From NCBI GenBank assembly GCA_035084275.1, contig CM068771.1, positions 4,278,001 to 4,342,000 of the forward strand: DNA of 64,000 nucleotides, written 5' to 3'. Position 1 is the first letter of the stretch. Each line of letters starts with the position of its first letter. This document shows positions 7,701 to 45,783 of this stretch, one piece after another. A program made the position numbers and the translations under genes. The notes under the pieces are model-generated. The model was not told where the DNA came from, searched no databases, and saw nothing but the letters and a program-made list of their open reading frames with translations. The DNA comes from Hydrolagus colliei. Lineage: Eukaryota.

Positions 7701-10700
7701 TTATTCAAGCTGCTTATTACGTTAGGAATGAATAAATACTGAATGTCAACGAGACTGAAGCCCTCCCGATTAGCTCCAGTCAGCGCCTTCACACCTCAGG
7801 TACTGGCAGCATCAACCTCCATGGTTGTACATTCCATATCAACAAACCAGTCAGGAACCTAGATGTCTTGTTCTATCCTCAACTGTCTTTCCTCCCCCAC
7901 TTACAAGCCGTGACTCATTCTGCCTTCAATCACCTCCGCAACATTGCCCAACTCCGCCACTAGGTCACCCCTCAGGCCGCTGAAACTGTATCCAATACGA
8001 TACCAGGCTTCACTTTGATTGAAGCCTGTGGTAGCGACTGAGCTATTGTGTGTAATACAGTAACATGGGGGTAAATGGAGGCATTTAGTGTTTGATATCA
8101 GAATAGATGTTTGAATGTATATTTACATTTCTTGACAGATGAGTTCTTCCCCAAAGTGCCAGTGGGTTTGGTGGTCTCCTCACTGCTCTTAGGACTTGCC
8201 ATAATAGTGCTGAGTGTTCTTGTCGTCTACAGTGTAAAACAGCACCGAGAGATCAAAGGTACGTTTCCGTCAGTAACATCCCTCAACTTAACACTGTGTT
8301 ACTGTTTGTGTGAGAATATGCAAGTTCTATAAATCAATTGCTTTCTCCCTTCACTCAGTAACCACCTGGCCTGTTTCATGTCACTGCCCTATTCTTCCCC
8401 CCATCAGCAAGTTAGGCTTTCAACCTATCTGTCCCCACTCTCTGGAACTCAATCCAACTGTCTTTTCGAATCAGTCTTTCCAAATCACTGCCACATCATC
8501 CCATTCTGAAAGATGCTCTATAAATGTCATTTTGTTGTTGTTGTTTAATAGGCCCCCTCTCCCCACTCTCACTGACTCACTGGAGACAATAAAACAGCAT
8601 CTTAGACTACCACAGCTTGGCTAAATTATTAATTATTGCAGTATTATCTCATCGCTCGCTCCTCTCTCCCTTCTCTCGTCGAACGCTCCACTCTTCTCTT
8701 ATCGCTCGCTCCACTCTCCCTTCTCCGCCTAAGGGTGCATCGCGCGAGGGCGGTGAACTCCCATATGCAGACCAACCAGCCAGCGCATATACGCACGTTA
8801 CTCAATAAAGTCACGCATTTTTTCCTTCGCGCATATTTGAGTTCACAATTGAGAAAGTTGCGATCGACGAGTGCCTACTGTAACTGAGTTGAGCTTTATT
8901 CTGTGTAGTTTATCGCTTGTTATTGTTGTAAACAGGTAGTTTGACCACTAAATAATACTGTATTCAATATTGGTTTCTAACAGTTTTGCTTTGTATCCTC
9001 CAGATCTTGAGAAGACAGTTGGTAAGTCATCAAAGTAAAATAACAATCTCATATTATGATTACTCTCACTCACAAGGTTCACACAAATCAGACGTAAGGT
9101 GGTGTTACAACACTTCTGTTTGCCAACAAAAGGCAAAGTTGCTACACTCTCCTGTCAACCTGGGGAAATGCTCATGGGGAGCCAAATCAAATTCAAGGAT
9201 TATTATTGTGGTATAAGGTTAACTTGCAATTCTTTAGCGCTCTCCACGCATGGTAGCATCTCAAAGCACTTAAGAATGGCGGAGCCTGACTGTGGTCTGG
9301 TGGGGCGGTTGGGCCGTAAGCATGTAGGAAAAGGAATGTTTTAAGGCAGGTCTTAAGGGGAGATGGGGAGCAAGGCAGAGGGATTGAAGGAGAGAATCCA
9401 TTGTTTCGGGGGTCGGTCGCTGAATGTATAAAGGTGGAGAGGAGGGAAAGTTCGCTGGGAAGTTGACATGTATATGAGATACATGATAAGAGACTTGAAG
9501 GAGTATATGGATAGGGCAGAACAGCTGCTGTAAGAAAAGATTGCTTTAATAACTCTTACAAACTAGATATTTCACATCATTAACTGTTCATTTTCTTCGC
9601 TTAGACAACAGTGGCTTGTCAATATACACACATTTCAGGGAGGGGGTGGGGTGGATAGAATGAGCAAGTTTGTCAGTAACACAGGGAGTGAGCCAATGAT
9701 GGAGGGATGGAGGAAATGAAAGAAGAAGGTATTGAGAGAGAACAACAACAATATTGCACTTATATAGCGCTTTTCACGTCGGGAGGACGTCCCAAAGTGT
9801 CTCCCAAAACAAGGGAGTGATTTGGGAGCTACATAAGGTTTGATCACTTCTCTCTTGGTTCTAGGGTGGAAGAGGATTTGTAGGTGTGCAGGTAAGAGTC
9901 TAACTGCTAAAGGAACCTGACTCCCCCCCAACCACCCCGCCACACACTTACATGCCCTCCCCACCCCCCACCCACCCCCCACACACATGAACTCAATCCC
10001 CACCCAGACACATACTCCCGCTGAGGGTGGTGTGGGAGTATGTGATGGTATCTCACACACCATCACATACCCCCACACCACTCACACACACTCACATCTC
10101 TCTCCCACACACACCATCAAATCCCCCCGACACACACATCACCTCACACCACACCCCCCACACAACAACAAATATTACATTGATAGAGCGCCTTTCACAT
10201 TGGGAAGATGTCCCAAGGCGCTGAACAGTCGGGTCAGGACCCGAGCAAGGGGGAGGGGCAAGGTGGGTGGGGGGAGGGGAGGGAGAGAGTTGGGAGGGCA
10301 GCTGGAGGCACTGACCAAGAGGAGAGTCTTGAGACTGGCCTTGAAGGAGGTGAAGGGGAAGTGAGGTGAAGGGACTATGGGATGGAGTTTCAGAGTGTGG
10401 GGGCAGAGGCTGAAAGCCCGGCCACCGATGGGAGGGCAGATCAAGCGGAGAACATGGAGCAGACTGGAGCCCGGGGTAGGCAGGTTGATAGGATGTCAGC
10501 TGGTCAGAGAGATAGGAGGGGGCAAGGTAGTGAATCATCTTGAAAGTGAGGACAACACAAACACCCCCCCCACAATGCACATAACCTCACAAGCCTCCAA
10601 CACAACTCTCCCTCCTCCCCCCGCCCCCCCCACAAACACACACACACACACACCCACAAACACCCTCGCATTCCCTCCCAACACACGCCCTCACATCTTC

Positions 10701-12614
10701 CCTCTGGCCCCCCCACCGCTGCACACATCCTCACTTCCCCTCACCTCCACACACCCTCATGTCTCCCCCCACAACACACATAGTCACATCTCCCGCACAC
10801 ACCCTCAAACAACACTCCTCACACAAACCTCCACATAACCCACAAACACCCTTACAGCTCTCCCCCCCACACCTGCAAATTGCTCAGCCAAACACACCCT
10901 CATATTCCCCCCACCAAACACACTCACACCCGAACCCTACACACCCTCAGTCACAACTCCCCCACCACACACATCCTTGCATTCCTCACCCACACATATA
11001 CACATATCCCCCCATACACACCCTCATATCCCCTCCACACACATCAAACTCCACCCACTAAACCCTCACATAACCCTCACATCCCCACACACACAGCCTC
11101 ACATCCCCCTCACCCACACACCCTCACATCCCCCCTACACACACACACCCTCACATCCCCCCTACACACACAGCCTCACATTCCCCCTCACCCATAAACC
11201 TTCACATCCCCCCTACACACACACACCCTCACACCCCCCCTACACACACACACCCTCACATCCCCCTCACCCACACACCCTCACATCCCCCTCACCCACA
11301 CACCCTCACATCCCCCCTACACACACACACCCTCACACCCCCCCTACACACACACACCCTCACATCCCCCTCACCCACACACCCTCACATCCCCCTCACC
11401 CACACACCCTCACATCCCCCCTACACACACACACCCTCACATTCCCCCCAACACACACCCTCACATCCCCCCTACACACACACACCCTCACATCCCCCCT
11501 CCACACTGACACACCCCAGTCCACACACACCCTCACATTCCCCCCTCCTCCCCCCCCCAACACACACCCTCACATTCCCCCCTCCTCCCCCCCCCAACAC
11601 ACACCCTCACATCCCATCACACACTCACCCCCAACACACACCCTCACATTCCCCCCTCCTCCCCCCCCCAACACACACCCTCACATTCCCCCCTCCTCCC
11701 CCCCCCAACACACACCCTCACATCCCATCACACACTCACCCCCAACACAAACATTTCCCACCCCCACACATGCTCATAATCCCCTCCAGACTTACATCAT
11801 CCCCACACACCCTCACATCCCACCCCTCACACACACCCTCACATCCCACCCCTCACACACATGCACATCACCCCCTCTTCCTCTCCCCTCCACACACACC
11901 CCCCACATCACCGCCCAACTCGTCCCCCTACCCCCCCCCCCCCCCCCACACCCACAGACTCTGAGCCTTTGTGTTGGATTCTGTTCCCAGGAGATGTCAG
12001 TGTTTGACACAAAGGCTTCTCTCCCGAAGCTGAAGATCATCTTATTGATAATTGTCAATGTGTCCGACATTAATGGTCTGGTTCTCACTCTAGTTACAGT
12101 CACTCTGGATCCTGACACAGCCCATCCCCGGCTCATCCTGTCTGAGGACCTGACCAGTGTGAGACTCGGAGACACATGGCAGCCGCTCCCTGACACCCCA
12201 AAGAGGTTTAGTGTCTATGCCATTGTCCTGGGGTCTGAGGGCTTCACATCAGGGAGACATTACTGGGAGGTGCAGGTGGGGAACAAGACAAGGTGGATTG
12301 TGGGATTGGCCAGAGAGTCTGTCAACAGGAAACAACCAATCACATGGTCACCAGAGGGCGGGGTCTGGGGGGTGGAGCTGAGGGGCGGGGCCTATGAGGC
12401 TCTGACGTCACCCCCCACCCCCCTGCCCCTGACAGTGAGACCCGGGAAGGTCGGAGTTCACCTGGACTATGAGGGGGGACAGGTGTCAGTTTACGACGCT
12501 GATCACATGTCTCATCTCCACACCTTCACCCAAACTTTCACTGAGAAACTCTATCCTCTCTTCAGTGTCTGGAGTGGTTCTGAGCCTCTGACAATCTGCC
12601 CAGTGACTGGTTAA
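1549..12614 (+). CDS. Butyrophilin-like receptor, copy 1, complete, 455 aa; exons 1549-1606, 5951-6298, 6546-6821, 8139-8258, 9004-9021, 9865-9891, 12094-12614
   Basis: Signal [19 protein letters not shown]; IgV (LDC...VRWFR...DNGKYTC); IgC ([16 protein letters not shown]); [21 protein letters not shown]; micro-exons DLEKTV and GWKRICRCA; B30.2 [10 protein letters not shown]...GRHYWEV...[10 protein letters not shown]. All introns GT-AG and phase 1. Joined CDS is 1368 nt and open. Confidence 0.9.
2014..2750 (+). mobile_element. L2 LINE 3' fragment
   Basis: [14 protein letters not shown]...[15 protein letters not shown]; (GTT)n tail. Confidence 0.8.
3011..3525. mobile_element. Tigger-like MITE, second family; truncated relative at 928-1413
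   Basis: TA-CAGCAGAAGCCCGTTTATCC ... GGATAAACAGGATTTTACTG-TA. Confidence 0.75.
3656..4150 (+). mobile_element. L2 LINE 3' fragment
   Basis: [22 protein letters not shown]...[16 protein letters not shown]. Confidence 0.8.
4150..4600 (-). pseudogene. cwc15: Processed pseudogene of spliceosome factor CWC15, inside the signal-IgV intron of BTN copy 1
   Basis: Minus-strand translation Q Y*SRDL...[15 protein letters not shown]...[21 protein letters not shown]...FKVKRR matches CWC15 as I recall it. No introns; several in-frame stops. Confidence 0.88.
4693..5454. mobile_element. Older inverted member of the same MITE family, with nested CR1
   Basis: TA-CAGGTAGACCC ... GATCTATCTG-TA; interior matches the reverse complement of 13609-14124. 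Confidence 0.75.
4787..5149 (+). mobile_element. CR1 LINE 3' fragment
   Basis: ORF2 C-terminus YKILKGLD...[14 protein letters not shown]...FKAETDRFL; tail CCTACTCCTGCTCCTAATTCTTATG. Confidence 0.85.
8639..8880. mobile_element. Degenerate CpG-rich MITE (paralogs 31248-31494, 58185-58431)
   Basis: Imperfect TIR CAGTATTATCTCATCGCTCGC vs reverse complement CAGTAGGCACTCGTCGATCGC. Confidence 0.45.
10560..11960. repeat. C/A-rich low-complexity satellite (CACACACCCTCACATCCCCC-like) in the last BTN intron; paralogs about 33370-34405 and 60105-61170
   Basis: Almost G-free on the + strand; length differs between copies. Confidence 0.9.
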
Positions 12615-13608
12615 TCAGGAGGAAAACACTGAGTCACTGACTAGGTTCACAGGTTGGTGGAGTGGGGCTGGGGTGGGGGGGGAGGGAGTTGAGTGGCCAT
12701 TTTAAGATGAGAGTTGGCTTTGGGTCAGTATCAATGGGGGGGGGGGGGAATCCATCGCCTTGGCAACCAACCGCTGACAGGGTGTTAGAGCGGCAAGAGG
12801 GCCCCATGTGTTGCGGTTGCTGGGAGGACTGACTGAGGTCCTCCTCATGGCTTTCCCTCCCATCTCTCATTAAATGGGGGGCGAGATAGGGACTGAGCCC
12901 CCACCAGCCCTCACCACCCACCGTCTATTTGACTGTTGTAACCACGAGGTTTGGATGGAGCCGAGTGTTTGATTCTGGGCTTTTCCCCCAGTTTTGAGCT
13001 GAGTCTGAGACAGGAATCAATTACAATGAAAACTTCATCACCAGCTGGTCTCTGGGCTTGTGCTGAGAGAATCTGAGCTTCCATCAGTGTGTGAGCTCAC
13101 ACGGTCTGAGACAGGGATATCGGCTGATATCTTCCTCTCCAGCAATGCCCAGTCTCACAGTCGGGGGCTGGGCTCAGAATCTCACTGAAATCTCCCAAAT
13201 CACTTTAGTGTCTATAAACAAGGTGACACATTCTACTCTAGCGTCAGCCTCGTCTCACTGTGTATAAACAATGTGTAATGTGTATTTTCAGTGACTACTT
13301 TTATAATCTGTGTAACATTTCTCATTGTAACAATCAGTCAAGAAGCTTCACCTTCAACCCTCATTAAACCAATGTCCCGTGTGTGTCAAGTCAACTTGAT
13401 ATTATTATAGAAAATATTTTGCAAAATACAAGATCAATTAACACTAAATCATGTTATGTCATTATTTTATGCCCAATGATTGTACACAATCTACACACAC
13501 TCCTCCCCCTCCCTCTCCCTCTCCCATCCCCACCACCCCCGAAACACTCAGACACTGATACACACACCACTGACCATCAACCCCTGATACAAGAACACCA
13601 ACAAGTTA

Positions 13609-14124
13609 CAGGTAGACCCCACTTAACATCGCCTCGGTTAACATACTTTCGTTATTACATTGCTGATACATTGGAAACACACAAATATCCCTCCCCGACC
13701 GTGGAGGATACGTTCCTGAACCCCCCCCCCCAAGTGATTAGTAAAACCGTGGTTGGCAAATACAAGGCCAACCGCGTGTCTGGTTGATGTAACTGGGTCA
13801 TCGCACCAAACTCTAGTGTTAGTGTTGAAACCCATGGATGCGCAAAATTCACTGCCGCGGTTGGCAAAGGTTGTCGCAGAGAGGAAACCACGGATACGGA
13901 GTGGGCAGCGAGAGAGATCATCAGTGAGTGAGTGAGCCAGGAAGGCAGTCAGGGAGTGAGTGTAATGGGTTTGTTTTTAGAAATTTTTGACGAAAAATGT
14001 CCAAAAGAACCTAAATCCAGTTTTAACATTCATTCTTATGGGAAACATGTAATCACTTAACGTTGTTTCGCTTAAAGTCGCACTTTTCAAGAACCAAACT
14101 ACGATGTTAAGCGGGGTCTACCTG
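13609..14124. mobile_element. Tc1/pogo (Tigger-like) MITE (paralog 62853-63377)
   Basis: TIR CAGGTAGACCCCACTTAACATCG / CGATGTTAAGCGGGGTCTACCTG flanked by TA. Confidence 0.88.
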
Positions 14125-14534
14125 TACATTTTCACAGCATCTTTCATGTCAGGAGGACGTCCCTAGGCGCTGACAATCAGGGATCCCCACCTGATCTGGT
14201 GTTTGGGATCAGGAGGGGTGGAGGACAGGGAGGGGAGGGTAAGAGGTTTACCAATGGCACGGTTGAATAGGGGGGTCTTCAGATGCGGCTTGAAGGAAGC
14301 AATGGAGGGCGTGAGGTGGAGAGACTGAGGGTGCGTGCAGAGAGGTTGATAGTTCACCTGCCAATGAGAGGGCGGAGCAGTTGATCGAGTTGTTATTACT
14401 GTATCATTGTCTTCAAGCCACTTGTGCACTTCTTATGAAGCTTTGCCTGATTTTCTGCTGTTTCCCACCCTTTTCCCCCCAAATGTCAGTTCACATTACA
14501 AACCGTTTGATTTGTATTTCTAACTAACCCCGGC

Positions 14535-16115
14535 ACTTTCTGGAAGTTTATTTGATTTTTTAAGCTTTTTTCCAGCACTTTCTAGAAGTTGATCACCAGT
14601 AGGCACCTTCACGTGAACGTTTGGCTAATTTCCATCCGCACTTCCATCTTGAAACATCCGTTGATTTGCATAAATTTCACACATGTTCACATTGAAATAA
14701 TAATAACTTCACATTAACTTACGTTCAACGTCAAGGTGTTTTGGACAATTTTAATGAAGATTTGGCTGATTTCCAGCTGTGTCTAAAAACGTTCCCAAAA
14801 TTTCAACAAATATTCAGAACAATTTGATCTGAATTTCCAGTTTATTAGAGCACTTTCCAGGAGTTTCAGCGAATTTTCAGCTGTTTTTCCAGCACTTTCT
14901 AGAAGTTACAGTAGTCATCAGTAGTGCCCAGCCCACTTTCATGTGAACTTTTGGCTCATTTCCAGCTGCATATTTTTTAAATATGTGTTGATTTCCATCA
15001 ATTTAGCACATTTCAATTCATTTTACAGTATATTCTGTGAAGCGCTTTGTTACGTCGATAAGACATGAAAAAGCGCTGTATCAAATGCAAGGATTATTAT
15101 TATTATTTTTATATTAAACTTACATTCGACTTCAAGATGTTTGTTACCCATTTATATTACCCATTTCTGACGCATAATGAATATCTGTCTGATTTCCCAA
15201 AGTGTCTTAACACTTTCTCCAAGTTTCAACAAAAGTTCCAAGCAATTTCCCTCTTTTCCCCCCTTTCTCCCTTGACCCCACTTCCGTGACTGTTTGTCGG
15301 ACGCTGCCGTGCGCAGTTTGGCTGCCACGTTTCGCCCACAAATATAGTCAATTCTCCTCTCCTTCATCCTACCCCAACCCCTCCCCGCCTTCTCTTGTCC
15401 CTACCTGACTGTACAGCGCCTTGGGATGTCCTCTCAATGTGAAAGGCGCCACGTAAATGTAAGTTTTGATTGATTGATTGATTGTTTGTTTGATTGATTG
15501 ATTGATTGATGGATCAATCAATCAATCGAATGAATGAATGAATGTCCAATGGTTTCCAGAACTTTCTAGAAGCTTTAACACATTTTCAGCTGTTTTTCCA
15601 TCACTTTCTAGAAGTTACAGTAGTCACCAGTAGTGCCCAGCCCACTTTCACATGAACTTTTGGCTCATTTCCAGCTGTACATTCTTGAAATATCTGCTGA
15701 TTTCCATTAATTTAGCACATTTCAATTCACTTTACAGTACATTCTGTGAAGCGCTTTGTGACGTCGATAAGATGTGAAAAAGCACCAGATCAAATGCGAG
15801 GATTATTATTATTATTTTCATATTAAGATAATAATTACAACTTCACGCAAACTTACATTCGACTTCAAGATGTTTTTGACACATTTACACATTTACATTG
15901 CACATAATGAATCTCTGGCTGATTTCCCAAAGTGTCTTAACTCTTTCCCCAGTTTCAACAAAAGTTCCAAGCAATTTTATCTGAACGCCCGATGGTTTCC
16001 AGAACTCTCCGGAAGCTTTCGCACACATCCAGCACTTTCCAGAAGCTACCGGCCGCGCCTGGTAATTTCGCATGAACCTCTGGCACGTGGCCAGCTGATC
16101 GTTCTGGAAGTTTAA
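14535..16115 (+). promoter_or_regulatory. Distal array of heat-shock elements upstream of hsp70 copy 1
   Basis: About 9 nTTCnnGAAn sites. Best are TTCcaGAActTTCtaGAAgcTTT (15553-15577) and TTCcaGAActCTCcgGAAgcTTT (15996-16020). Confidence 0.8.
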
Positions 16116-16438: not shown

Positions 16439-16496
16439 ATCTCCCAGAGCTGGGAATGAAGTTCCTCTGATTTCCAGCTGTTTCTGGACTGGGTTC

Positions 16497-16690
16497 CTTC
16501 CTGAAGTCTCCACAACGTTCCACGCGCTCCGATTGGCGGCCGACCAGGAAGCGGCCCGGGGCGTCCTCTTTGTGACATCACCTTGACGCCCTCTGATTGG
16601 CCCCCCTCCACCCCCCCGAGGCCGCTAGGCCCCGCCCACAACCAAGAAACCAGCCTTTATATACAGGGCGAGGAGTGAAGCCAGGCTCAG
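16497..16690 (+). promoter_or_regulatory. hsp70 core promoter (paralog about 40340-40540)
   Basis: HSE-like TTCctGAAgtCTC 16498-16510; inverted CCAAT boxes (ATTGG about 16532 and 16596); GC box CCCCGCCC about 16630; TATATA 16658-16663 (40508-40513 in copy 2). Confidence 0.8.
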
Positions 16691-16915
16691 ACACTGAGAC
16701 AGACTGAGAGTCAGACTGACACTGAGACAGACTGACACTGAGACAGACTGACACTGAGACAGGCTGACACTGAGACAGACTGACACTGAGACAGACTGAC
16801 ACTGAGACAGACTGACACTGAGACAGACTGACACTGAGACAGACTGACACTGAGACAGACTGACACTGAGACAGACTGAGAGTCAGACTGACACTGAGAC
16901 AGACTGACACTGAGA
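16689..16915 (+). repeat. 16-bp tandem repeat (AGACTGACACTGAGAC)n at the start of the hsp70 5' UTR, about 14 units
   Basis: Directly visible. Copy 2 (about 40539-40685) is 80 bp, or 5 units, shorter. Confidence 0.9.
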
Positions 16916-17124
16916 GGGGCTGAGAGACTGAAAGCCTGAGAAACAAGAAGGGAGAGCGAGAGAAAGAAGAGAGAGAGCGAAGGACGGAGCTACAAGAAGA
17001 AGACATAAAGAGGAAAACACCTTCGCGGCGACTTCAGTCCAAGACTCACTGACATTGGGACAGCGATTCGGAGCCAAAGGATCTAAGTCACGTACAGACG
17101 CGCTCACGTACAGACGGCAGGACA

Positions 17125-18978
17125 ATGGCCCCAGCGATTGGCATCGACCTGGGCACCACCTACTCGTGTGTGGGTGTGTTCCAGCACGGCAAGGTGGAGA
17201 TCATCGCCAACGACCAGGGCAACCGCACCACACCCAGCTACGTGGCCTTCAACGACACCGAGAGGCTGATCGGCGAAGCCGCCAAGAACCAAGCAGCCCT
17301 CAACCCCCCCAACACCGTCTTCGATGCCAAGAGGCTGATCGGGAGGAAGTTCGATGACCCTGTGGTGCAGGCGGACATGAAGCACTGGCCTTTCCAGGTG
17401 GTGAGCCAGGGGGGCAAGCCCAAGGTGCAGGTTGAGTACAAGGGAGAGTCCAAGACGTTCAACCCCGAAGAGATCTCGTCCATGGTTCTGACCAAGATGA
17501 AGGAGATCGCCGAGGCTTATCTGGGCTCCAGAGTCACCAACGCTGTCATCACGGTGCCCGCTTACTTCAACGACTCCCAGCGCCAGGCCACCAAAGACGC
17601 CGGGATGATCGCGGGGCTCAACGTCCTTCGCATCATTAATGAACCCACGGCAGCCGCCATCGCCTACGGTCTGGACAAGAAGGGCCAGGGGGAGAAGAAC
17701 GTCCTGATCTTTGACCTGGGTGGAGGCACCTTCGACGTGTCCATCCTCGCCATCGACGGCGGGATCTTTGAGGTCAAATCCACAGCCGGTGACACCCACC
17801 TGGGGGGCGAGGACTTTGACAGCCGTATGGTCGACCACTTCATCCAGGAGTTCAAGAGGAAAAACAAGAGGGACATCAGCCAGAACAAGAGAGCAGTCAG
17901 GAGGCTGAGGACAGCCTGCGAGAGAGCAAAGAGGACTCTGTCTTCAAGCACCCAAGCCAGCATTGAGATCGACTCACTGTTTGAGGGAATTGACTTCTAC
18001 ACCTCCATCACCAGGGCACGGTTTGAGGAGCTCAATGGAGACCTGTTCAGAGGAACCCTGGAGCCAGTGGAGAAAGCGTTGACAGACGCCAAGCTGGACA
18101 AGTCTCAGATCCACGAAGTTGTCCTCGTCGGTGGCTCCACTCGCATCCCGAAGATCCAGAAGCTTCTACAGGATTTCTTCAACGGCCGAGAGCTGAACAA
18201 GAGCATCAACCCGGATGAGGCAGTGGCCTACGGGGCAGCTGTGCAAGCCGCCATCTTGATGGGCGACAAGTCTGAGAATGTGCAGGATCTGCTCCTGCTG
18301 GACGTGACTCCTCTGTCCCTGGGTCTGGAGACAGCGGGAGGCGTCATGACCTCCCTCATCAAGAGAAACTCAACCATACCCTCCAAACAGACCCAGGTCT
18401 TCACCACCTACTCCGACAACCAGTCCGGTGTCTTGGTGCAAGTCTACGAGGGCGAGAGAGCCATGACCAAGGACAACAACCTCCTGGGCAAGTTTGAGCT
18501 GAGTGGAATCCCCCCGGCTCCCCGCGGGGTCCCGCAGATCCAGGTTACCTTCGACATCGATGCCAACGGCATCCTTAGTGTCTCGGCCGCTGACAAGAGC
18601 ACTGGTAATGAGAACAAGATCACCATCACCAACGAGAAGGGCCGGCTGAGCAAGGAGGAGATCGAGAGGATGGTGCAGGAGGCTGAGAGGTACAAGGCGG
18701 ATGATGAGACGCAGCGGGAGAGGGTGATGGCCAAGAACAAGCTGGAGTCATTCGTCTACACAGCCAAATGTGCGATGGAGGACAAGAGCATGGAGGGCAA
18801 GGTGGGAGAGGAGGACAGGCGGCAGGTGCTGGACAAGTGCAAACAGGTCATCAACTGGCTGGATGGAAACCAGACAGCGGAGAAGGAAGAGTTTGAGCAC
18901 CAGCTGAAGGAGCTGGAGAGGGTGTGCAGTCCTGTCATGGCCAGGCTGAGGCAGGGAGGGGCAGAGGGCGGTCAGTGA
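17125..18978 (+). CDS. hsp70: Intronless heat-inducible cytosolic Hsp70, copy 1; 617 aa to TGA, 634 aa if read through to TAA at 19029
   Basis: Signatures [22 protein letters not shown] and [14 protein letters not shown]; no introns; upstream TATA, CCAAT and HSEs. Confidence 0.97.
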
Positions 18979-19326
18979 TCAGGCAAGAGCTGCCCATCTA
19001 CCGGCCCAACCGTGGAGGAAGTCGATTAAACGTCAGCCGATGGACTTCCTGCCCCTTTGGCTTTTCTGTACCTGCTCAGGTGTTAACCTTTCCCACCTTC
19101 AGACACTTTGGGATATATGTATAAATGATAAACGTATAGGGCTATGGGTTAAGAGTAAGGGTGTGGGACTGATTGGGTAGATCTTTCAAACAGCCAGCGC
19201 AGATACAATGGGCCTAATGGTCTACTTATTTGCGGTAAGATTGAATGATTCTATGTATATTTTGAACTAATGATCTGCTATGAATGTATGTCACAGCGAC
19301 AGCAGCTGGACTCCGAATTTTATTTT

Positions 19327-19332
19327 ATTAAA
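19327..19332 (+). terminator. Probable hsp70 polyadenylation signal (paralog 43097-43102)
   Basis: ATTAAA preceded by a U-rich tract and followed by a GT-rich stretch. Confidence 0.55.
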
Positions 19333-20353
19333 CTGTTTGTACCCGATGTACTTCTGTGTGTGTGTGTGTGTGAGATTCATACTGGCTCAAACACTGGGGC
19401 CCTCAACTCTGAGTCAGAAGGTTGTGGGTGGAAGCCACACACTGGGCCGTGGAACCACAGTCTACCATGACACTTGAATGCAGGCGCTGGGTGGGGAGGG
19501 GGGCGTTGGGTGGGGGAGGGGGAGGGTGGAGTGTGGGGTTTGCGACATCGTCAGAACTGGCATCCTTCAAACGAAACATTAAAGTGAGCTCCCGTCAGCG
19601 CAGTGTTTCACAAACAGTTGTGGATTTCGTGAGCAAATGTTATTATTGTTAAGGGATTGTGACCCCAGTAAAGTGATCGGAAATCGCCCTAGAACTGTGG
19701 TCCTTTTCCCTGCTGGATAAACAGAGGCTTGTGGAATGGCGGTGTTGATGGGGAAACTTCACCCTATTGTTCACAGTAAAACATTAATAATAATCCTGAC
19801 GTTTGAGAAGCACCTTTCGTGTCAGGTGGACATCTCAAAGAGGTTACACCATAAACATAAGAGCTGAGAACTTCTAGGACATGGTTATACAGTAAAATTC
19901 ACATCAGTATTATTGCTAACATCACACCTGGACCCGAGTAAATTTACCTTTCCCTCGTGTCTCCCGATGTAGGTAAGTTAGAGTGCGATATCAGAAACAG
20001 AATCATTTACTGAGGGTTAAATTGACCGGCTGGGTGGATACAATGGACGCCAGTTAAATCGGACACGAAAGGGCCGAGCATTTAATCTGAAATAAGCAGC
20101 TTCTGAGGCTGACCGCTATCGATGTATTAAATCTCATCCTTTGTTTTAACCCAATTACTGACAACATAGTAACGCCAATTACTACAACATATAGCGCCTC
20201 TGACGTCAGGAGGAAGTCCCGAGGCACTGTCACCAATTGCTGATGTGTAAAGCCCTGAACACAATGCTCACTGTCATTTACAAACTAAGAAGGTGATTGA
20301 TACCTTGATAAATAGTGTTCACAGAAAACGGGTAAAAAAAAAGTGACAGAAAT

Positions 20354-21883
20354 TTAAACTTTTTTATTGAAAAGTTCTCTCAAGTCGGACTGTACGAGAT
20401 CAGCGTGGCGTCGCTCTCTGATGCTCGCAACGATGTCGTTAAGTGCGTTCGAAAACTTGTTGTAGAGTCCGCTCTTTAGTAAGAAGCGTTCAGCCTCTCG
20501 CAGGCCAGTCAGAGCTGTGCTGGCTGTCACAGGCGAGGCCCCATTGTCCTCAGAGTCGCTGTCGCTGCTGTTCTCGACTAGTAGGCGCTCGGCGGCAACA
20601 GCTTCGGCCACGATATTCTCCTGACCTTGCGGATCACGGCAAGGTAGATCAGAGTCAATGTCCAGGAACTGGTCAGCGATCTGCCTCTCGCCCTCGGCCT
20701 CTGTGCTTGTCTTCTCGTCAGCCTCAGCACGGGGAGCAGCGTCACCAGACGCAAACCCTGCCTTTGCGAAGCAATTGGATATCATCGCAGGCTCCATGCT
20801 CTCCCAGGCCCTGGCAGCCATGCCGATGGCATCCAGCAGGCTGATGTGTCTGGCCATCTTTCCCACCGAGGCCTGGGGGATGATGGTGTTGCTGTCAATG
20901 GCGTCGAGGAGGCGATTCCGTAGCTCCTCGCGGTAGGAAAGCTTCAGGTGTCGGATGATTCCTTGACCCATGGGTTGGATCATGGTGGTGTCCGGGGGAA
21001 TCAGCTCCAGGCAGATGTTCTTAAGCGTTGGGACGGTCAGATGACACGGTGCGCTGTCCATGAGAAGAAGAACTTTACGCCCCAGGTTGACCAGCTCTGT
21101 GTCCCACTGCACCAGCCACTCCTTAAATATCGTTCCTGTCATCCACGCCATTTTGTTGGCCTTATAGGTGACAGGCAGAACGGCGCAGTCGACTCCCTGC
21201 ATACAGCGAGGGCGCTGGCTCTTCCCGATGACCAGCAGTTTGCGCCGGTCGCAGCCGGTCATGTGGGCGCAGACCATCAGCGTGACACTGTCCGTCGCTC
21301 CCTTTACACCACTCGGCTCAGTCGGGTGCAAATACGAGCCGTTGGGCACCGCGCGATAGCGCAGCCCCGTTTGCTCCGCGTTGTAGATGGCATCTGGGGC
21401 ATAGGAAGAGAGCAGCACGGTGCGGGAGTTAGCGCCCTCTAGGCCAGCGCTCCTCAGCTTTCCGGGAAACAGCCTGTACACTATGTTGTTACGTGCCTTC
21501 CAGCGGCTAAACCAGCCGTCGGTCACGGTGAACCCCGGCTTCCCGAGCTCGTGCGCCAGGCTCTGCGCCTTGGCTTTGAGGATGGGCCCATTGAGCGGCT
21601 GCCCCTCGGTGGACGCCCTTTGGAACCACAGGAGGAGAGCGAGCTCCACCTGGGGATCTTTGCCTTTGCGATCCCTCTTCTTACGCAGACCCACGTCGCC
21701 CTCGGCCAAGGTGGCCGCTGTCCGGCGTAGCTTCGTCTCACTGGCGACGAGGTCACCCAGCGTCGACTTCTTGACCCCGAGCCTCCTGGCCAGTTCTCGC
21801 AGGGGAGTCCCCCGCGGCTCCAACTTGACCCTGTCTAACACTTCTATCTTCTCCAAAAGTGTCCGGGACATTTTCTTCGACAT
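20354..21883 (-). CDS. Tigger/pogo transposase-derived protein (TIGD-like), copy 1, 509 aa
   Basis: N-terminal HTH, CENP-B/Tc5 HTH (LLLWFQ...GPILKAKA...GWFSRWK) and DDE_1-type core (IYNAEQTGL, KANKMAWMT, LLMDSAPCH, QPMGQG). Single open, CpG-rich exon; Kozak-like GCCATAATG. Confidence 0.88.
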   Translation of the reverse strand: MSKKMSRTLLEKIEVLDRVKLEPRGTPLRELARRLGVKKSTLGDLVASETKLRRTAATLAEGDVGLRKKRDRKGKDPQVELALLLWFQRASTEGQPLNGPILKAKAQSLAHELGKPGFTVTDGWFSRWKARNNIVYRLFPGKLRSAGLEGANSRTVLLSSYAPDAIYNAEQTGLRYRAVPNGSYLHPTEPSGVKGATDSVTLMVCAHMTGCDRRKLLVIGKSQRPRCMQGVDCAVLPVTYKANKMAWMTGTIFKEWLVQWDTELVNLGRKVLLLMDSAPCHLTVPTLKNICLELIPPDTTMIQPMGQGIIRHLKLSYREELRNRLLDAIDSNTIIPQASVGKMARHISLLDAIGMAARAWESMEPAMISNCFAKAGFASGDAAPRAEADEKTSTEAEGERQIADQFLDIDSDLPCRDPQGQENIVAEAVAAERLLVENSSDSDSEDNGASPVTASTALTGLREAERFLLKSGLYNKFSNALNDIVASIRERRHADLVQSDLRELFNKKV

Positions 21884-22580
21884 TATGGCTTCTTATGTGT
21901 TGAGAGGATGACACAAGTTTAACAATAGAAAATAATACTTCCGATGTCTCAAATGGCTTCACAGGTCTTTTTTTTTGGGGGGGGTGGGGTGGGGGGGCGG
22001 GAAGGGAGGAAATGTCTGGTTCATTTCCGTCCGCCGGGAAATGTCCGGGAAGTGTCTGGTTCCTTCCCGAAGCGGTCGATGTCCCGCCCCCTTTCCCCCC
22101 CTCCCGCTGGCTGCTGATTGGCCGCCCCCAGGGAGCTTCAGCGAGTGGCTTAATGGAACAGACCAGGTTTGAGGCAGGAGGAAACACACACACACTTTAT
22201 CTGCCGTGTTAGTATTAGTGCCCAGTCCCTCTTCACAAGTACCACTTTACCCTCTTTTCCCCCTTTCTCCCCCGGCCCCGATTTGGCTGCCGCGTTTCGC
22301 CCACAAACGTACAGTCAATTCTCCTACCCTCCTTCATCCCACCCCGACCCCTCCCCATCACCCCTGCTCTTGTCCCTACCTGTCTGTACAGCTCCTCGGG
22401 ACGTCCCCTCGACGCGAAAGGCGATATATAAACGTACGTTTTGATTGATTTAGTGGATGAAACGTGGCAGCCATTTGCACACGGCAGTGTCCCACAAACA
22501 GCCGTTGATTGGGTGACCCACAATCGAGTAACACGGGCATTCCTACTTACCGCTAGTTAAACAGAGGCATGCGAAGGTAC

Positions 22581-24607: not shown

Positions 24608-25107
24608 NNNNNNNNNNNNNNNNNNNNNNNNNNNNNNNNNNNNNNNNNNNNNNNNNNNNNNNNNNNNNNNNNNNNNNNNNNNNNNNNNNNNNNNNNNNNN
24701 NNNNNNNNNNNNNNNNNNNNNNNNNNNNNNNNNNNNNNNNNNNNNNNNNNNNNNNNNNNNNNNNNNNNNNNNNNNNNNNNNNNNNNNNNNNNNNNNNNNN
24801 NNNNNNNNNNNNNNNNNNNNNNNNNNNNNNNNNNNNNNNNNNNNNNNNNNNNNNNNNNNNNNNNNNNNNNNNNNNNNNNNNNNNNNNNNNNNNNNNNNNN
24901 NNNNNNNNNNNNNNNNNNNNNNNNNNNNNNNNNNNNNNNNNNNNNNNNNNNNNNNNNNNNNNNNNNNNNNNNNNNNNNNNNNNNNNNNNNNNNNNNNNNN
25001 NNNNNNNNNNNNNNNNNNNNNNNNNNNNNNNNNNNNNNNNNNNNNNNNNNNNNNNNNNNNNNNNNNNNNNNNNNNNNNNNNNNNNNNNNNNNNNNNNNNN
25101 NNNNNNN
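24608..25107. other. Assembly gap (500 N); other gaps 34456-35210, 50741-51035, 51155-51585, 51644-52048
   Basis: N runs. ORFs spanning them are artefacts. Confidence 1.
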
Positions 25108-39404: not shown

Positions 39405-39960
39405 AATGGTTTCCAGAACTTTCTAGAAGCTTTAACACATTTTCAGCTGTTTGTCCAGCACTTTCTAGAAGTTACAGTAGTCACCAGTAGTGCCCAGCCC
39501 ACTTTCACGTGAATTTTTGGCTCATTTCCAGCTGCACATTCTTGAAATATCTGCTGATTTCCATCAATTTAGCACATTTCAATTCACTTTACAGTACATT
39601 CTGTGAAGCGCTTTGTGACGTTGATAAAACGTGAAAAGCGCCAGATCAAATGCGAGGATTATTATTATTATTTTCATCTTAAGATAATAATTACAACTTC
39701 ACGCAAACTTACATTCGACTTCAAGATGTTTTTGACACATTCACACATTTCCATTGCACATAATGAATCTCTGGCTGATTTCCCAAAGTGTCTTAACTCT
39801 TTCCCCAGTTTCAACAAAAGTTCCAAGCAATTGTATGGTTTCCAGAACTCTCCGGAAGCTTTCGCACACATCCAGCACTTTCCAGAAGCTACCGGCCGCG
39901 CCTGGTAATTTTGCATGAACCTCTGGCACGTGGCCAGCTGATCGTTCTGGAAGTTTAACC
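39405..39960 (+). promoter_or_regulatory. Distal HSEs upstream of hsp70 copy 2
   Basis: TTCcaGAActTTCtaGAAgcTTT 39410-39434, TTCcaGAActCTCcgGAAgcTTT 39839-39863, plus shorter sites. Confidence 0.78.
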
Positions 39961-40894: not shown

Positions 40895-42748
40895 ATGGCC
40901 CCAGCGATTGGCATCGACCTGGGCACCACCTACTCGTGTGTGGGTGTGTTCCAGCACGGCAAGGTGGAGATCATCGCCAACGACCAGGGCAACCGCACCA
41001 CACCCAGCTACGTGGCCTTCAACGACACCGAGAGGCTGATCGGCGAAGCCGCCAAGAACCAAGCGGCCCTCAACCCCCCCAACACCGTCTTCGATGCCAA
41101 GAGGCTGATCGGGAGGAAGTTCGATGACCCTGTGGTGCAGGCGGACATGAAGCACTGGCCTTTCCAGGTGGTGAGCCAGGGGGGCAAGCCCAAGGTGCAG
41201 GTTGAGTACAAGGGAGAGTCCAAGACGTTCAACCCCGAAGAGATCTCGTCCATGGTTCTGACCAAGATGAAGGAGATCGCCGAGGCTTATCTGGGCTCCA
41301 GAGTCACCAACGCTGTCATCACGGTGCCCGCTTACTTCAACGACTCCCAGCGCCAGGCCACCAAAGACGCCGGGATGATCGCGGGGCTCAACGTCCTTCG
41401 CATCATTAATGAGCCCACGGCAGCCGCCATCGCCTACGGTCTGGACAAGAAGGGCCAGGGGGAGAAGAACGTCCTGATCTTTGACCTGGGTGGAGGCACC
41501 TTCGACGTGTCCATCCTCGCCATCGACGGCGGGATCTTTGAGGTCAAATCCACAGCCGGTGACACCCACCTGGGGGGCGAGGACTTTGACAGCCGTATGG
41601 TCGACCACTTCATCCAGGAGTTCAAGAGGAAAAACAAGAGGGACATCAGCCAGAACAAGAGAGCAGTCAGGAGGCTGAGGACAGCCTGCGAGAGAGCAAA
41701 GAGGACTCTGTCTTCAAGCACCCAAGCCAGCATTGAGATCGACTCACTGTTTGAGGGAATTGACTTCTACACCTCCATCACCAGGGCACGGTTTGAGGAG
41801 CTCAATGGAGACCTGTTCAGAGGAACCCTGGAGCCAGTGGAGAAAGCGTTGACAGACGCCAAGCTGGACAAGTCTCAGATCCACGAAGTTGTCCTCGTCG
41901 GTGGCTCCACTCGCATCCCGAAGATCCAGAAGCTTCTACAGGATTTCTTCAACGGCCGAGAGCTGAACAAGAGCATCAACCCGGATGAGGCAGTGGCCTA
42001 CGGGGCAGCTGTGCAAGCCGCCATCTTGATGGGCGACAAGTCTGAGAATGTGCAGGATCTGCTCCTGCTGGACGTGACTCCTCTGTCCCTGGGTCTGGAG
42101 ACAGCGGGAGGCGTCATGACCTCCCTCATCAAGAGAAACTCAACCATACCCTCCAAACAGACCCAGGTCTTCACCACCTACTCCGACAACCAGTCCGGTG
42201 TCTTGGTGCAAGTCTACGAGGGCGAGAGAGCCATGACCAAGGACAACAACCTCCTGGGCAAGTTTGAGCTGAGTGGAATCCCCCCGGCTCCCCGCGGGGT
42301 CCCGCAGATCCAGGTTACCTTCGACATCGATGCCAACGGCATCCTTAGTGTCTCGGCCGCTGACAAGAGCACTGGTAATGAGAACAAGATCACCATCACC
42401 AACGAGAAGGGCCGGCTGAGCAAGGAGGAGATCGAGAGGATGGTGCAGGAGGCTGAGAGGTACAAGGCGGATGATGAGACGCAGCGGGAGAGGGTGATGG
42501 CCAAGAACAAGCTGGAGTCGTTCGTCTACACAGCCAAAAGCGCGATGGAGGACAAGAGCATGGAGGGCAAGGTGGGAGAGGAGGACAGGCGGCAGGTGCT
42601 GGACAAGTGCAAACAGGTCATCAACTGGCTGGATGGAAACCAGACAGCGGAGAAGGAAGAGTTTGAGCACCAGCTGAAGGAGCTGGAGAGGGTGTGCAGT
42701 CCTGTCATGGCCAGGCTGAGGCAGGGAGGGGCAGAGGGCGGTCAGTGA
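40895..42748 (+). CDS. hsp70: Intronless heat-inducible cytosolic Hsp70, copy 2; readthrough end would be 42799
   Basis: Near-identical to copy 1: about 5 nt differences by eye, one amino-acid change (AKCAM vs AKSAM). Confidence 0.97.
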
Positions 42749-43121
42749 TCAGGCAAGAGCTGCCCATCTACCGGCCCAACCGTGGAGGAAGTCGATTAAA
42801 CGTCAGCCGATGGACTTCCTGCCCCTTTGGCTTTTCTGTACCTGCTCAGGTGTTAACCTTTCCCACCTTCAGACACTTTGGGATATATGTATAAATGATA
42901 AACGTATAGGGCTATGGGTTAAGAGTAAGGGTGTGGGACTGATTAGGTAGATCTTTCAAACAGCCAGCGCAGATACAATGGGCCTAATGGTCTACTTATT
43001 TGCAGTAAGATTGAATGATTCTATGTATATTTTGAACTAATGATCTGCTATGAATGTATGTCACAGCGACAGCAGCTGGACTCCGAATTTTATTTTATTA
43101 AACTGTTTGTACCCGATGTAC

Positions 43122-43156
<35 letters not shown>

Positions 43157-45752: not shown

Positions 45753-45783
<31 letters not shown>

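What the first reader, a model, noticed from the sequence alone, without database searches (positions are those of the whole stretch)
18976..19029. Both Hsp70 copies stop at an in-frame TGA just before an intact GPTVEEVD tail
Seen: ...GGC GGT CAG TGA TCA GGC AAG AGC TGC CCA TCT ACC GGC CCA ACC GTG GAG GAA GTC GAT TAA, i.e. GGQ*SGKSCPSTGPTVEEVD*, identical at 42746-42799. A small GGCA-AGAGC-TGCC hairpin follows the TGA, and an 8-bp inverted repeat (AGGAAGTC 19016-19023 / GACTTCCT 19043-19050) encloses the TAA. Known: EEVD docks TPR co-chaperones (HOP, CHIP) and class B J-proteins. Inference: either an EEVD-less inducible Hsp70 uncoupled from those partners, or a recoded UGA giving EEVD-minus and EEVD-plus isoforms from one mRNA. 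Limits: the context UGA-U is not the classic UGA-CUAG, I see no obvious SECIS, and the copies are too similar for the intact tail to prove selection.
Basis: partly seen in the sequence, partly recalled or inferred. Interest (0 to 1): 0.82.

Follow-up and report, generated by a model that had tools for sequence, protein, structure and literature searches.

The report
Hsp70 genes truncated before EEVD
Two neighbouring heat-shock protein 70 genes in a chimaera-like fish genome carry a real, evolutionarily derived stop codon that removes the last 17 amino acids, including the EEVD docking motif; the likely product is a working chaperone uncoupled from some partners, not a recoded stop.

Summary
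Two intronless Hsp70 genes (17125-18978 and 40895-42748, + strand) each end at an in-frame TGA after 617 codons. Sixteen intact codons (SGKSCPSTGPTVEEVD) and a TAA follow. The copies differ at 5 coding positions, so the TGA was assembled twice independently. The only close relative, the syntenic Callorhinchus milii gene (94% aa, collinear, 634 aa), has CAA (Gln) at that codon. Two sharks have CAG, so the stop is derived. The genes are not decaying: omega is 0.10 against C. milii, and the two copies show 1 non-synonymous against 4 synonymous differences. Promoter, heat-shock elements and polyA signal are intact.

Nothing supports recoding. There is no SECIS. The context is UGA-UCA, not UGA-CUA(G). 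No significant RNA structure follows the TGA. The tail is no better conserved than the adjacent 3'UTR, and its intactness fits a fairly recent stop.

The best reading is a genuine nonsense substitution giving an EEVD-less inducible Hsp70 that keeps its ATPase, substrate-binding and lid domains. The C. milii orthologue ends in EEVH in three records, one a cDNA, so both holocephalan orthologues lack canonical EEVD. A tsetse Hsp68 has the same layout. Interest is moderate.

The parts
15553..16115 (+). Cluster of heat-shock-element-like sites upstream of copy 1, including a perfect 4-unit HSE TTCCAGAACTTTCTAGAA at 15554-15571
   Evidence: 4 perfect matches in the window against 0.55-0.73 expected, all upstream of the two Hsp70 genes; matches of 8/9 or better
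16497..16663 (+). Proximal promoter of copy 1: HSE-like CTTCCTGAAGTCTCC (16497-16511), inverted CCAAT boxes (16532, 16596), GC box (16630-16638), TATA (16658-16663)
   Evidence: The block 16467-16605 is about 75% identical to C. milii L001:8978-9114
17125..18975 (+). Hsp70 copy 1 coding sequence, 617 codons, intronless: NBD, SBD-beta and helical lid complete
   Evidence: Collinear with the C. milii CDS, dS 0.31, omega 0.10
18976..18978 (+). Derived in-frame TGA stop (codon 618); Gln in the orthologue and in outgroups
   Evidence: CAA in C. milii; CAG in Heptranchias and Carcharodon
18979..19029 (+). Stranded ancestral tail, 16 codons SGKSCPSTGPTVEEVD plus the ancestral TAA stop; now most likely 3'UTR
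   Evidence: 4 synonymous and 1 non-synonymous difference from C. milii; nucleotide identity 89.6%, against 89.0% for the next 82 aligned 3'UTR bases
19014..19053 (+). Hairpin enclosing the ancestral stop (5' arm is the E-E-V codons, 3' arm lies in the 3'UTR); holocephalan-specific
   Evidence: window z -1.83; C. milii z -4.91. Absent in the sharks
19327..19332 (+). ATTAAA polyadenylation signal of copy 1, about 300 nt after the TAA
39410..40513 (+). HSE cluster and proximal promoter of copy 2 (perfect HSE 39411-39428; HSE-like 40340-40354; CCAAT 40375 and 40439; TATA 40508)
40895..42745 (+). Hsp70 copy 2 coding sequence, 617 codons; differs from copy 1 at 5 nucleotides and 1 amino acid (Cys549Ser)
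42746..42748 (+). The same derived TGA stop in copy 2
42749..42799 (+). Stranded tail plus TAA of copy 2, identical to copy 1
43097..43102 (+). ATTAAA polyadenylation signal of copy 2

Best explanation
A genuine nonsense substitution in this lineage converted an ancestral Gln codon into TGA. The codon lies in the disordered Gly-rich linker of a heat-inducible, intronless, HSPA1-type Hsp70. Both tandem paralogues carry the TGA, either because it predates the duplication or because gene conversion spread it. Ribosomes terminate there and release a 617-residue Hsp70 with a complete ATPase domain, substrate-binding domain and helical lid, but without the last 17 residues including EEVD. The 51 nt that once encoded the tail are now 3'UTR and have not yet had time to decay. 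Inferred steps: the gene has no introns and the new stop lies only 51 nt upstream of the old one, so no EJC-dependent nonsense-mediated decay is expected and the mRNA should be stable. The protein should still cycle with class A J-proteins and nucleotide-exchange factors. It should no longer dock on the TPR clamps of HOP and CHIP, and it should not release class B J-protein autoinhibition by itself. Constitutive EEVD-bearing Hsp70s are assumed to cover those functions.
For: Shown: the TGA is present in two copies that differ at 5 CDS positions and 51 positions over 5.4 kb. The orthologous, syntenic C. milii gene is collinear (1905 nt, no indels) and has CAA there; two sharks have CAG in the conserved Q-[A/S]-G-K motif, so the stop is derived. 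The gene is under purifying selection: omega 0.10 overall, 0.06 for the NBD and 0.07 for SBD-beta. Between the two truncated copies there is 1 non-synonymous change against about 27 expected at the intergenic rate (P about 3e-11), and 4 synonymous changes against about 8 expected. One non-synonymous among five differences gives binomial P about 0.011 (my arithmetic site counts). Pfam HSP70 positions 1-598 of 599 are retained. The alignment to human HSPA1A runs to residue 615 of 641, so only the disordered tail is lost. HSEs, CCAAT, GC box, TATA and polyA signal are intact in both copies. No recoding signal was found: no SECIS, context UGA-UCA-G against the UGA-CUA(G) consensus, UGA_U terminating better than UGA_C, and no significant structure after the TGA (z -0.58 and +0.15). 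The intact tail needs no selection: its nucleotide identity to C. milii equals that of the adjacent 3'UTR, and zero non-synonymous changes has probability 0.25 if the stop arose in the last quarter of the branch. Precedent for tolerated departures: the C. milii orthologue ends in EEVH in three records, one of them a cDNA, whereas 135 of 142 full-length Hsp70 hits end in EEVD. Tsetse Hsp68 has the same stop-then-tail layout (PMC5597180). The consequences of deleting EEVD come from the literature (PMC10687569).
Against: No reads, transcripts, peptides or second individual could be examined, so fixation and expression of the TGA allele are unproven. The 617-aa products are not on record in the protein collection. 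The transcribed regions of the two copies are more alike than synonymous sites (UTR plus tail 2/580, and a 403-nt stretch without differences around the TGA). That pattern allows gene conversion, or mis-polishing between copies. The codon needs at least 2 substitutions from CAA, which is somewhat unusual. If the stop were as old as the split from C. milii, the perfectly preserved tail would be unexpected under neutrality (P 0.004), so an old stop would favour a translated tail. Basal readthrough of any UGA is not zero.
Confidence: 0.72

Rival explanations
1. Programmed (functional) UGA readthrough: most ribosomes stop at the TGA, but a regulated fraction inserts an amino acid and continues to the TAA. 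One mRNA then gives EEVD-minus and EEVD-plus Hsp70.
For: The tail is in frame, free of stops and intact at the amino-acid level, with 4 synonymous and 1 non-synonymous difference from C. milii. UGA is the leakiest stop codon (established knowledge). An independent insect Hsp68 has the same stop-then-EE[V/I]D layout. A hairpin lies downstream.
Against: The context UGA-UCA-G lacks the UGA-CUA(G) motif; even UGA-CUU-G gave only 0.27% readthrough, and UGA_U terminates better than UGA_C. No significant structure lies within reach of the ribosome. The hairpin begins about 35 nt downstream and encloses the old stop instead. The stop is not conserved, since the orthologue has Gln. Tail conservation equals 3'UTR conservation, and the two paralogues carry no informative differences.
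Confidence: 0.07
2. Sequence artefact or unfixed allele: the TGA is an assembly or polishing error propagated between near-identical copies, or the two 'copies' are haplotypes falsely placed in tandem next to assembly gaps, or the allele is a rare variant of the sequenced individual.
For: Five N gaps lie in the window, two of them between the copies. A 403-nt stretch around the TGA has no differences. The products are absent from the protein collection.
Against: The change is a substitution, not a homopolymer indel, and it needs 2 differences from the orthologous codon. The copies differ at 51 sites and 4 indels over 5.4 kb, with 1.4-1.9% intergenic divergence, so they were resolved separately. 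That divergence looks high for allelic haplotypes (inference). Even under false duplication the TGA would be seen on both haplotypes.
Confidence: 0.08
3. Decaying pseudogenes: both copies are non-functional relics, and the TGA is the first visible lesion.
For: There is a premature stop. The lid evolves faster than the other domains (omega 0.42). The genes sit in a repeat-rich, duplicated region.
Against: Both 1851-nt ORFs lack any other stop or frameshift. Non-synonymous divergence between copies is about 27-fold below the intergenic expectation. All Hsp70 signature motifs and the promoter elements are intact. The stop removes only a disordered tail.
Confidence: 0.06
4. Selenocysteine insertion at UGA.
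For: Only the presence of an in-frame UGA followed by an open frame.
Against: No SECIS match even at E<=10 in 18700-20500, and none at gathering score anywhere in the window. The single loose ATGA..AA..GA match in the 3'UTR does not fold like a SECIS (z about 0). Orthologues have Gln, not Cys or Sec. The position lies in a disordered linker with no redox role.
Confidence: 0.01
5. A-to-I editing of UGA to UGG (Trp), restoring the full-length protein at the RNA level.
For: The final A of UGA is formally editable, and a weak stem flanks the codon in one predicted fold (121-nt fold).
Against: That fold is not better than shuffles (z -0.99) and the TGA sits in a loop. The 5' neighbour G is the least favoured for ADAR (established knowledge). 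No long duplex is present.
Confidence: 0.01

Closest known systems
Callorhinchus milii 'heat shock 70 kDa protein 1B-like' (XP_007909996 / cDNA-derived AFK10521.1), the syntenic orthologue
   Same: 94% amino-acid identity, collinear intronless 1905-nt gene, the same SGKSCPSTGPTVEEV tail, the same neighbours (PRY/SPRY exon upstream, pogo-like block downstream), conserved proximal promoter and 3'UTR hairpin.
   Different: It has Gln (CAA) where the window has TGA, so its tail is translated (634 aa). It ends in EEVH instead of EEVD. It is single-copy in the 22-kb locus fetched.
Glossina morsitans GmmHsp68 (PMC5597180)
   Same: An inducible-type cytosolic Hsp70 cut to 619 aa by a premature stop, with 15 further in-frame codons ending in an EE[I]D motif immediately downstream. 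This is the same layout.
   Different: It is an insect gene of independent origin. The authors treated it as a possible annotation or sequencing problem, and no functional or evolutionary test was done.
Naturally EEVD-less cytosolic Hsp70s: plant Hsp70T T1/T2 lineages, yeast Ssb1/2, Trypanosoma brucei Hsp70.c (PMC10687569, PMC8269394, PMC3953656)
   Same: Cytosolic Hsp70s with intact ATPase and substrate-binding domains that lack the C-terminal EEVD. They are retained in genomes, and some expand as tandem clusters and are heat-induced.
   Different: Those are old, diverged lineages, often with lid or CTD deletions and specialised partners such as the ribosome-associated complex. Here the loss is a single recent stop in an otherwise canonical HSPA1-type gene, with the old tail still readable.
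Vertebrate programmed readthrough genes (LDHB, MDH1, AQP4, OPRL1, VDR; PMC4359377, PMC4132726, PMC5133446)
   Same: A UGA followed by a short in-frame extension carrying a C-terminal functional motif; in LDHBx and MDH1x this is a peroxisomal PTS1 signal.
   Different: Those genes have the UGA-CUA(G) context, a stop conserved across species, and a coding signature downstream. Here the context is UGA-UCA-G and the stop is not conserved.
Engineered Hsp70/Hsc70/Ssa1 delta-EEVD variants
   Same: The predicted biochemical phenotype: inactive with class B J-proteins alone and unable to bind TPR clamps, yet recruited in trans and stimulating disaggregation when mixed with wild-type Hsp70 (bioRxiv 10.64898/2026.02.06.704373).
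   Different: The laboratory deletions remove 4 residues. The natural allele removes 17, and its activity has not been measured.

Membership tests
Hsp70 (cytosolic, HSPA1-type, heat-inducible) | Full-length Hsp70 domain architecture (NBD, interdomain linker, SBD-beta, helical lid) | tested here: met
   Pfam PF00012 E 9.5e-261, model positions 1-598 of 599. Best solved-structure match is human HSPA1A at 1169 bits, query 2-613 to chain 4-615. The motifs [27 protein letters not shown] and DLLLLD are visible in the translation.
Hsp70 (cytosolic, HSPA1-type, heat-inducible) | Intronless coding sequence | tested here: met
   A single uninterrupted ORF, collinear with the single-exon C. milii gene.
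Hsp70 (cytosolic, HSPA1-type, heat-inducible) | Heat-shock elements and a core promoter upstream | tested here: met
   All perfect HSE matches in the window lie upstream of the two genes, 4 observed against about 0.6 expected. HSE-like site, CCAAT, GC box and TATA are present. These are consensus matches only; inducibility itself was not tested.
Hsp70 (cytosolic, HSPA1-type, heat-inducible) | C-terminal EEVD on the translated product | tested here: not met
   The ORF stops 17 codons before the ancestral end. EEVD is encoded only after the TGA.
Programmed stop-codon readthrough gene | Leaky stop context (UGA-CUA(G) or similar) | tested here: not met
   The context is CAG-UGA-UCA-G. Consensus and measured values come from PMC4359377 and PMC9841425.
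Programmed stop-codon readthrough gene | Stimulatory RNA structure shortly 3' of the stop | tested here: not met
   z -0.58 for the 100 nt starting at the TGA. The 4-bp hairpin gives z +0.15. The only notable hairpin starts about 35 nt downstream.
Programmed stop-codon readthrough gene | Stop codon conserved among species, with a protein-coding substitution pattern downstream after the stop arose | tested here: not met
   The orthologue and two outgroups have Gln. The paralogues have zero differences in the tail, which is uninformative. No other close relative exists in the collections searched.
Programmed stop-codon readthrough gene | Extended protein or ribosome footprints detected | not testable with these tools
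   No expression, Ribo-seq or proteomic data are available.
Selenoprotein | SECIS element in the 3'UTR | tested here: not met
   Rfam at E<=10 on 18700-20500 and at gathering score on the whole window found nothing. The candidate core match does not fold as a SECIS.
Selenoprotein | Cys or Sec at the homologous position in relatives | tested here: not met
   Gln in C. milii, Heptranchias and Carcharodon.
Naturally truncated EEVD-less cytosolic Hsp70 (functional class) | Lacks EEVD while keeping NBD and SBD, and is maintained by purifying selection | tested here: met
   (omega 0.10); 1 non-synonymous change against about 27 expected between the truncated copies. Caveat: this assumes the TGA predates the divergence of the copies.
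Naturally truncated EEVD-less cytosolic Hsp70 (plant Hsp70T / yeast Ssb / TbHsp70.c lineages) | Descent from one of those lineages | tested here: not met
   The nearest relatives are canonical vertebrate EEVD-bearing HSP70s at 84-94% identity. This is an independent, recent origin.
Processed or unitary pseudogene | Multiple disabling lesions or neutral substitution pattern | tested here: not met
   A single stop near the end, no frameshifts, and omega well below 1.

The most novel reading that the evidence does not exclude
The UGA is a regulated switch. Under some conditions, such as heat stress or particular tissues, a meaningful fraction of ribosomes read through it. One hsp70 mRNA would then yield an abundant EEVD-less chaperone and a minor EEVD-bearing one, tuning how much induced Hsp70 is coupled to HOP, CHIP and class B J-proteins. 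The same stop-then-EE[V/I]D layout in tsetse Hsp68 would then reflect a recurrent strategy rather than two accidents. A milder version has no readthrough: the EEVD-less form itself is selected as a second-wave Hsp70 that joins aggregate-bound Hsc70/J-protein complexes in trans and escapes CHIP.
Probability: 0.07. Interest if true: 0.8.

Novelty: new variant of a known kind. Interest (0 to 1): 0.35.

Why it matters
EEVD is one of the most conserved short motifs in eukaryotic proteostasis; 135 of the 142 full-length Hsp70s retrieved here end with it. A vertebrate whose stress-inducible Hsp70 genes are kept under selection without the motif would be a natural delta-EEVD experiment, and its sister lineage carries EEVH. 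The case asks whether an induced Hsp70 needs direct coupling to HOP/Hsp90, CHIP and class B J-proteins, or whether constitutive Hsc70 supplies that coupling and the induced pool only adds capacity, as recent in-vitro mixing experiments suggest. On the practical side, it warns annotators that this gene should be called as a 617-aa protein. It should not be marked 'low quality' or silently extended through the stop.

Tried and rejected
1. I looked up the exact 617-aa products of both copies in public assemblies to find independent reads or transcripts. Neither is on record.
2. I made three protein searches for other holocephalan orthologues to date the TGA: the lid region, the whole protein, and a stand-alone C-terminal fragment that lets short partial gene calls compete. 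Only C. milii is close; everything else is at or below 86% (whole protein) or 76% (fragment).
3. I scanned metagenome contigs for the conserved tail DNA. There were no matches.
4. For SECIS I ran Rfam at permissive and gathering thresholds, a loose core pattern, and folding of the single 3'UTR match. All were negative.
5. For readthrough-stimulating structure I folded 36-, 51-, 100- and 121-nt segments. None near the TGA is significant.
6. I considered a micro-intron removing the TGA. The only in-frame GT..AG option is 15 nt (18975-18989), far below any vertebrate intron, so I rejected it from the sequence itself.
7. I considered a +1 frameshift at CAG-UGA-U by analogy with antizyme. The +1 frame does not lead to EEVD, so I rejected it.
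8. I tried polarising the tail substitutions with shark outgroups. Only D>H and TAA>TGA could be assigned, both to the C. milii lineage. The synonymous sites are too diverged to use.
9. Literature searches for Hsp70 plus EEVD plus readthrough, and for C. milii or holocephalan Hsp70 tails, returned nothing relevant.
Full report
OBSERVATION. At 18967-19029, and again at 42737-42799, the + strand reads GGC GGT CAG TGA TCA GGC AAG AGC TGC CCA TCT ACC GGC CCA ACC GTG GAG GAA GTC GAT TAA. Each TGA closes an ATG-initiated ORF of 617 codons (17125-18978 and 40895-42748). tblastn with the product finds only these two loci in the window. The product matches Pfam HSP70 over model positions 1-598 of 599 (E 9.5e-261). 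It aligns to human HSPA1A (641 aa) from residue 4 to residue 615. The stop therefore falls just after the helical lid, in the disordered Gly-rich linker, and removes 17 residues including EEVD.

TWO INDEPENDENT COPIES. The genes lie in a duplicated block (16757-22284 against 40529-46053, 98.4% identical). They differ at five coding positions: three third-position changes, plus TGT/AGC at codon 549 giving Cys/Ser. Over 5.4 kb they differ at 51 substitutions and 4 indels. The TGA was therefore assembled twice. Two N gaps lie between the copies, so I cannot fully exclude a falsely duplicated haplotype. Even in that case the TGA would be seen on both haplotypes.

WHAT THE GENE IS. The only close relative in 5.8 billion clustered proteins is Callorhinchus milii 'heat shock 70 kDa protein 1B-like'. 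It is 634 aa, which equals 617 + 1 + 16, and it is 94% identical. All other hits, including shark and ray HSP70s, are at or below 86%. Its locus (L001) is syntenic with the window. A PRY/SPRY exon lies upstream, a conserved proximal promoter block follows, then the Hsp70 gene, then a conserved pogo-like block downstream. The two coding sequences are collinear over 1905 nt with no indel. dS is 0.31 and omega is 0.10; by domain omega is 0.06 for the NBD, 0.07 for SBD-beta and 0.42 for the lid. The window therefore comes from a holocephalan-like genome that is not C. milii. The gene is the orthologue of an expressed C. milii gene, since one cluster member is cDNA-derived. Both window copies keep HSE clusters; all perfect HSEs in the window lie upstream of the two genes. 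They also keep an HSE-like site, CCAAT, GC box and TATA in the core promoter, and an ATTAAA signal about 300 nt after the TAA.

THE STOP IS DERIVED. Codon for codon, the window has GAG GGC GGT CAG TGA TCA GGC where C. milii has GCG GGG AGC GAG CAA TCG GGC. Heptranchias and Carcharodon have CAG at the same place in the conserved Q-[A/S]-G-K motif. Gln is therefore ancestral, and the window lineage changed this codon at two or more positions. The route was either CAA>TAA>TGA or CAA>CGA>TGA; in the second route the last step is a CpG transition (inference). The four codons before the stop are the most diverged part of the 3' end of the gene. That fits an unconstrained linker in which the only effect of a stop is to cut off what follows.

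THE TRUNCATED GENES ARE MAINTAINED, NOT DECAYING. Between the two copies, intergenic sequence differs by 1.4-1.9%. Synonymous sites differ by 4/421 and non-synonymous sites by 1/1430. At the intergenic rate about 27 non-synonymous changes would be expected (Poisson P about 3e-11). Independently of any rate, one non-synonymous change among five has binomial P about 0.011 (my arithmetic from the site counts). Amino-acid-level purifying selection has thus acted since the copies last shared sequence. If the TGA predates that point, which is the parsimonious reading, then selection has been acting on an EEVD-less protein. There is a caveat. The UTRs and tail are even more alike than synonymous sites (2/580), and a 403-nt stretch around the TGA has no differences. 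Gene conversion across the transcription unit, which could also have copied the TGA from one gene to the other, is therefore not excluded.

IS THE UGA RECODED? For selenocysteine the answer is no. Rfam finds no SECIS at E<=10 in 18700-20500, nor anything at gathering score in the whole window. A loose ATGA..AA..GA pattern is not enriched (136 matches against 159 expected), and its single 3'UTR match does not fold like a SECIS. Relatives have Gln, not Cys.

For readthrough there is no positive evidence either. The context is CAG-UGA-UCA-G. The vertebrate high-readthrough consensus is UGA-CUA(G), and even UGA-CUU-G gave only 0.27% (PMC4359377). UGA_U terminates better than UGA_C (PMC9841425). 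The stop is not conserved.

The intact tail does not require translation. Its nucleotide identity to C. milii (43/48, 89.6%) equals that of the next 82 aligned 3'UTR bases (89.0%). The split of 4 synonymous to 1 non-synonymous differences integrates over the whole time since the two lineages separated, during most of which the tail was ordinary coding sequence. The one non-synonymous change (D>H) is on the C. milii side. Assuming neutrality after the stop arose, zero non-synonymous changes in 36 sites has P 0.004 if the stop is as old as the split. The probability rises to 0.06 at half the branch and 0.25 at a quarter. The data thus say the stop is younger than roughly half the branch or the tail is still constrained, and they cannot separate these two. 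I also rejected a micro-intron, because the only in-frame GT..AG option is 15 nt. I rejected a +1 shift, because that frame does not lead to EEVD. I rejected A-to-I editing, because the 5' neighbour is G, the site lies in a loop, and no duplex is significant.

MECHANISM (inferred). Termination at the TGA yields a 617-aa Hsp70. The gene is intronless and the new stop lies 51 nt before the old one, so EJC-dependent NMD should not apply (established knowledge). Without EEVD the protein should not bind the two-carboxylate clamps of HOP and CHIP. It also should not relieve class B J-protein autoinhibition; deletion of EEVD abolishes Hsp70 activity with class B JDPs (bioRxiv 10.64898/2026.02.06.704373). 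The same study reports that delta-EEVD Hsp70 added to wild-type Hsp70 plus a class B JDP stimulates disaggregation. An induced EEVD-less pool working alongside constitutive EEVD-bearing Hsc70 could therefore be tolerated or even useful. That step is speculation.

A SECOND DEPARTURE IN THE SISTER LINEAGE, AND A PRECEDENT. C. milii ends in EEVH in two RefSeq versions and in a cDNA-derived protein that differs from them elsewhere. Of 142 full-length Hsp70 hits, 135 end in EEVD, and EEVH occurs only in C. milii. With a background of roughly 3% non-EEVD termini, finding that the flagged gene's nearest orthologue also lacks canonical EEVD is suggestive (about P 0.03). It hints at altered constraint on the terminal residue in this holocephalan gene, although the rest of the tail has been conserved. 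[quoted passage not shown] That is the same layout, and it was left unexplained. EEVD-less cytosolic Hsp70s are otherwise known as old lineages: plant Hsp70T, yeast Ssb and TbHsp70.c.

VERDICT. The best explanation is a real, derived nonsense substitution producing an EEVD-less but otherwise canonical, selectively maintained inducible Hsp70 in both tandem copies (confidence about 0.72). Functional readthrough is about 0.07, artefact or unfixed allele about 0.08, pseudogene about 0.06, and selenocysteine or editing about 0.01 each. It is a new variant of a known kind, namely a naturally truncated cytosolic Hsp70. It has moderate interest as a natural delta-EEVD experiment in a vertebrate. It is not evidence for recoding.

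Noticed in passing
L001:11900-11905 (C. milii orthologue); proteins P0011, P0208, P0209: The C. milii orthologue ends in EEVH (GAT>CAT) and uses TGA instead of the ancestral TAA. This is seen in two RefSeq versions and in a cDNA-derived record. Among 142 full-length Hsp70 hits, EEVH occurs only here. Whether EEVH still binds TPR clamps or class B J-proteins is unknown.
   Followed up: partly
window 19014-19053 (and 42784-42823); L001:11888-11930: A hairpin encloses the ancestral stop codon; its 5' arm is the E-E-V codons and its 3' arm lies in the 3'UTR. It is modest in the window (-15.6 kcal/mol, z -1.83) but strong in C. milii (-21.3 kcal/mol, z -4.91, 0 of 200 shuffles). In C. milii the two lineage-specific changes (GAU>CAU and UAA>UGA) each add a pair to an inner stem CAUUG/CGAUG. 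The hairpin is absent in two sharks. It may be a holocephalan-specific hsp70 3'UTR element. Only two species are available, so no covariation test was possible.
   Followed up: partly
window 20354-21883 (-) and 44101-45666 (-): Intact 509- and 521-aa ORFs with CENP-B_N, HTH_Tnp_Tc5 and DDE_1 domains (pogo/Tigger-type transposase) lie about 1.3 kb downstream of each Hsp70. The DNA is about 81.6% identical to the syntenic, unannotated C. milii block L001:13551-14578. This suggests an old shared insertion or a domesticated pogo-derived gene.
   Followed up: partly
window 16690-16915 and 40540-40685: A 16-nt tandem repeat (GACACTGAGACAGACT, about 14.6 copies in copy 1) sits between the TATA box and the ATG, so presumably in the 5' leader. 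Copy 2 is 80 nt shorter. The repeat is not alignable with C. milii.
   Followed up: no
window 10977-12614, 61209-61829 (+); repeated blocks 6450-14747, 28967-34454, 55906-64000: PRY/SPRY (B30.2) exons of butyrophilin/TRIM-like genes flank the Hsp70 genes. They belong to a block present three times in the window at 90-99% identity. Their neighbours in C. milii are V-set/PRY/SPRY and RING-B-box-PRY/SPRY genes. The region looks like an MHC-type Hsp70/TRIM/butyrophilin neighbourhood undergoing segmental duplication.
   Followed up: partly
window 24608-25107, 34456-35210, 50741-51035, 51155-51585, 51644-52048: Five N runs (assembly gaps or masked sequence) lie in the window, two of them between the Hsp70 copies. 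They were not filled or looked up. They mean the exact duplication structure of the locus is uncertain.
   Followed up: no
window 19350-19375 against 43120-43157: A (GT)n microsatellite just after the polyA signal differs by 12 nt between the two copies. This is further evidence that the copies are distinct sequences.
   Followed up: no
window 18769-18771 against 42539-42541 (codon 549): The only amino-acid difference between the paralogues is Cys (TGT) against Ser (AGC) in the lid, which takes two nucleotide changes in one codon. C. milii has Ser. The lid is the fastest-evolving domain (omega 0.42).
   Followed up: no
window 17104-17838 (-) and 40874-41608 (-): Long antisense ORFs of 244 aa overlap the Hsp70 coding sequence. 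They are most likely a by-product of the high GC3 (0.80) of the sense strand, not genes.
   Followed up: no
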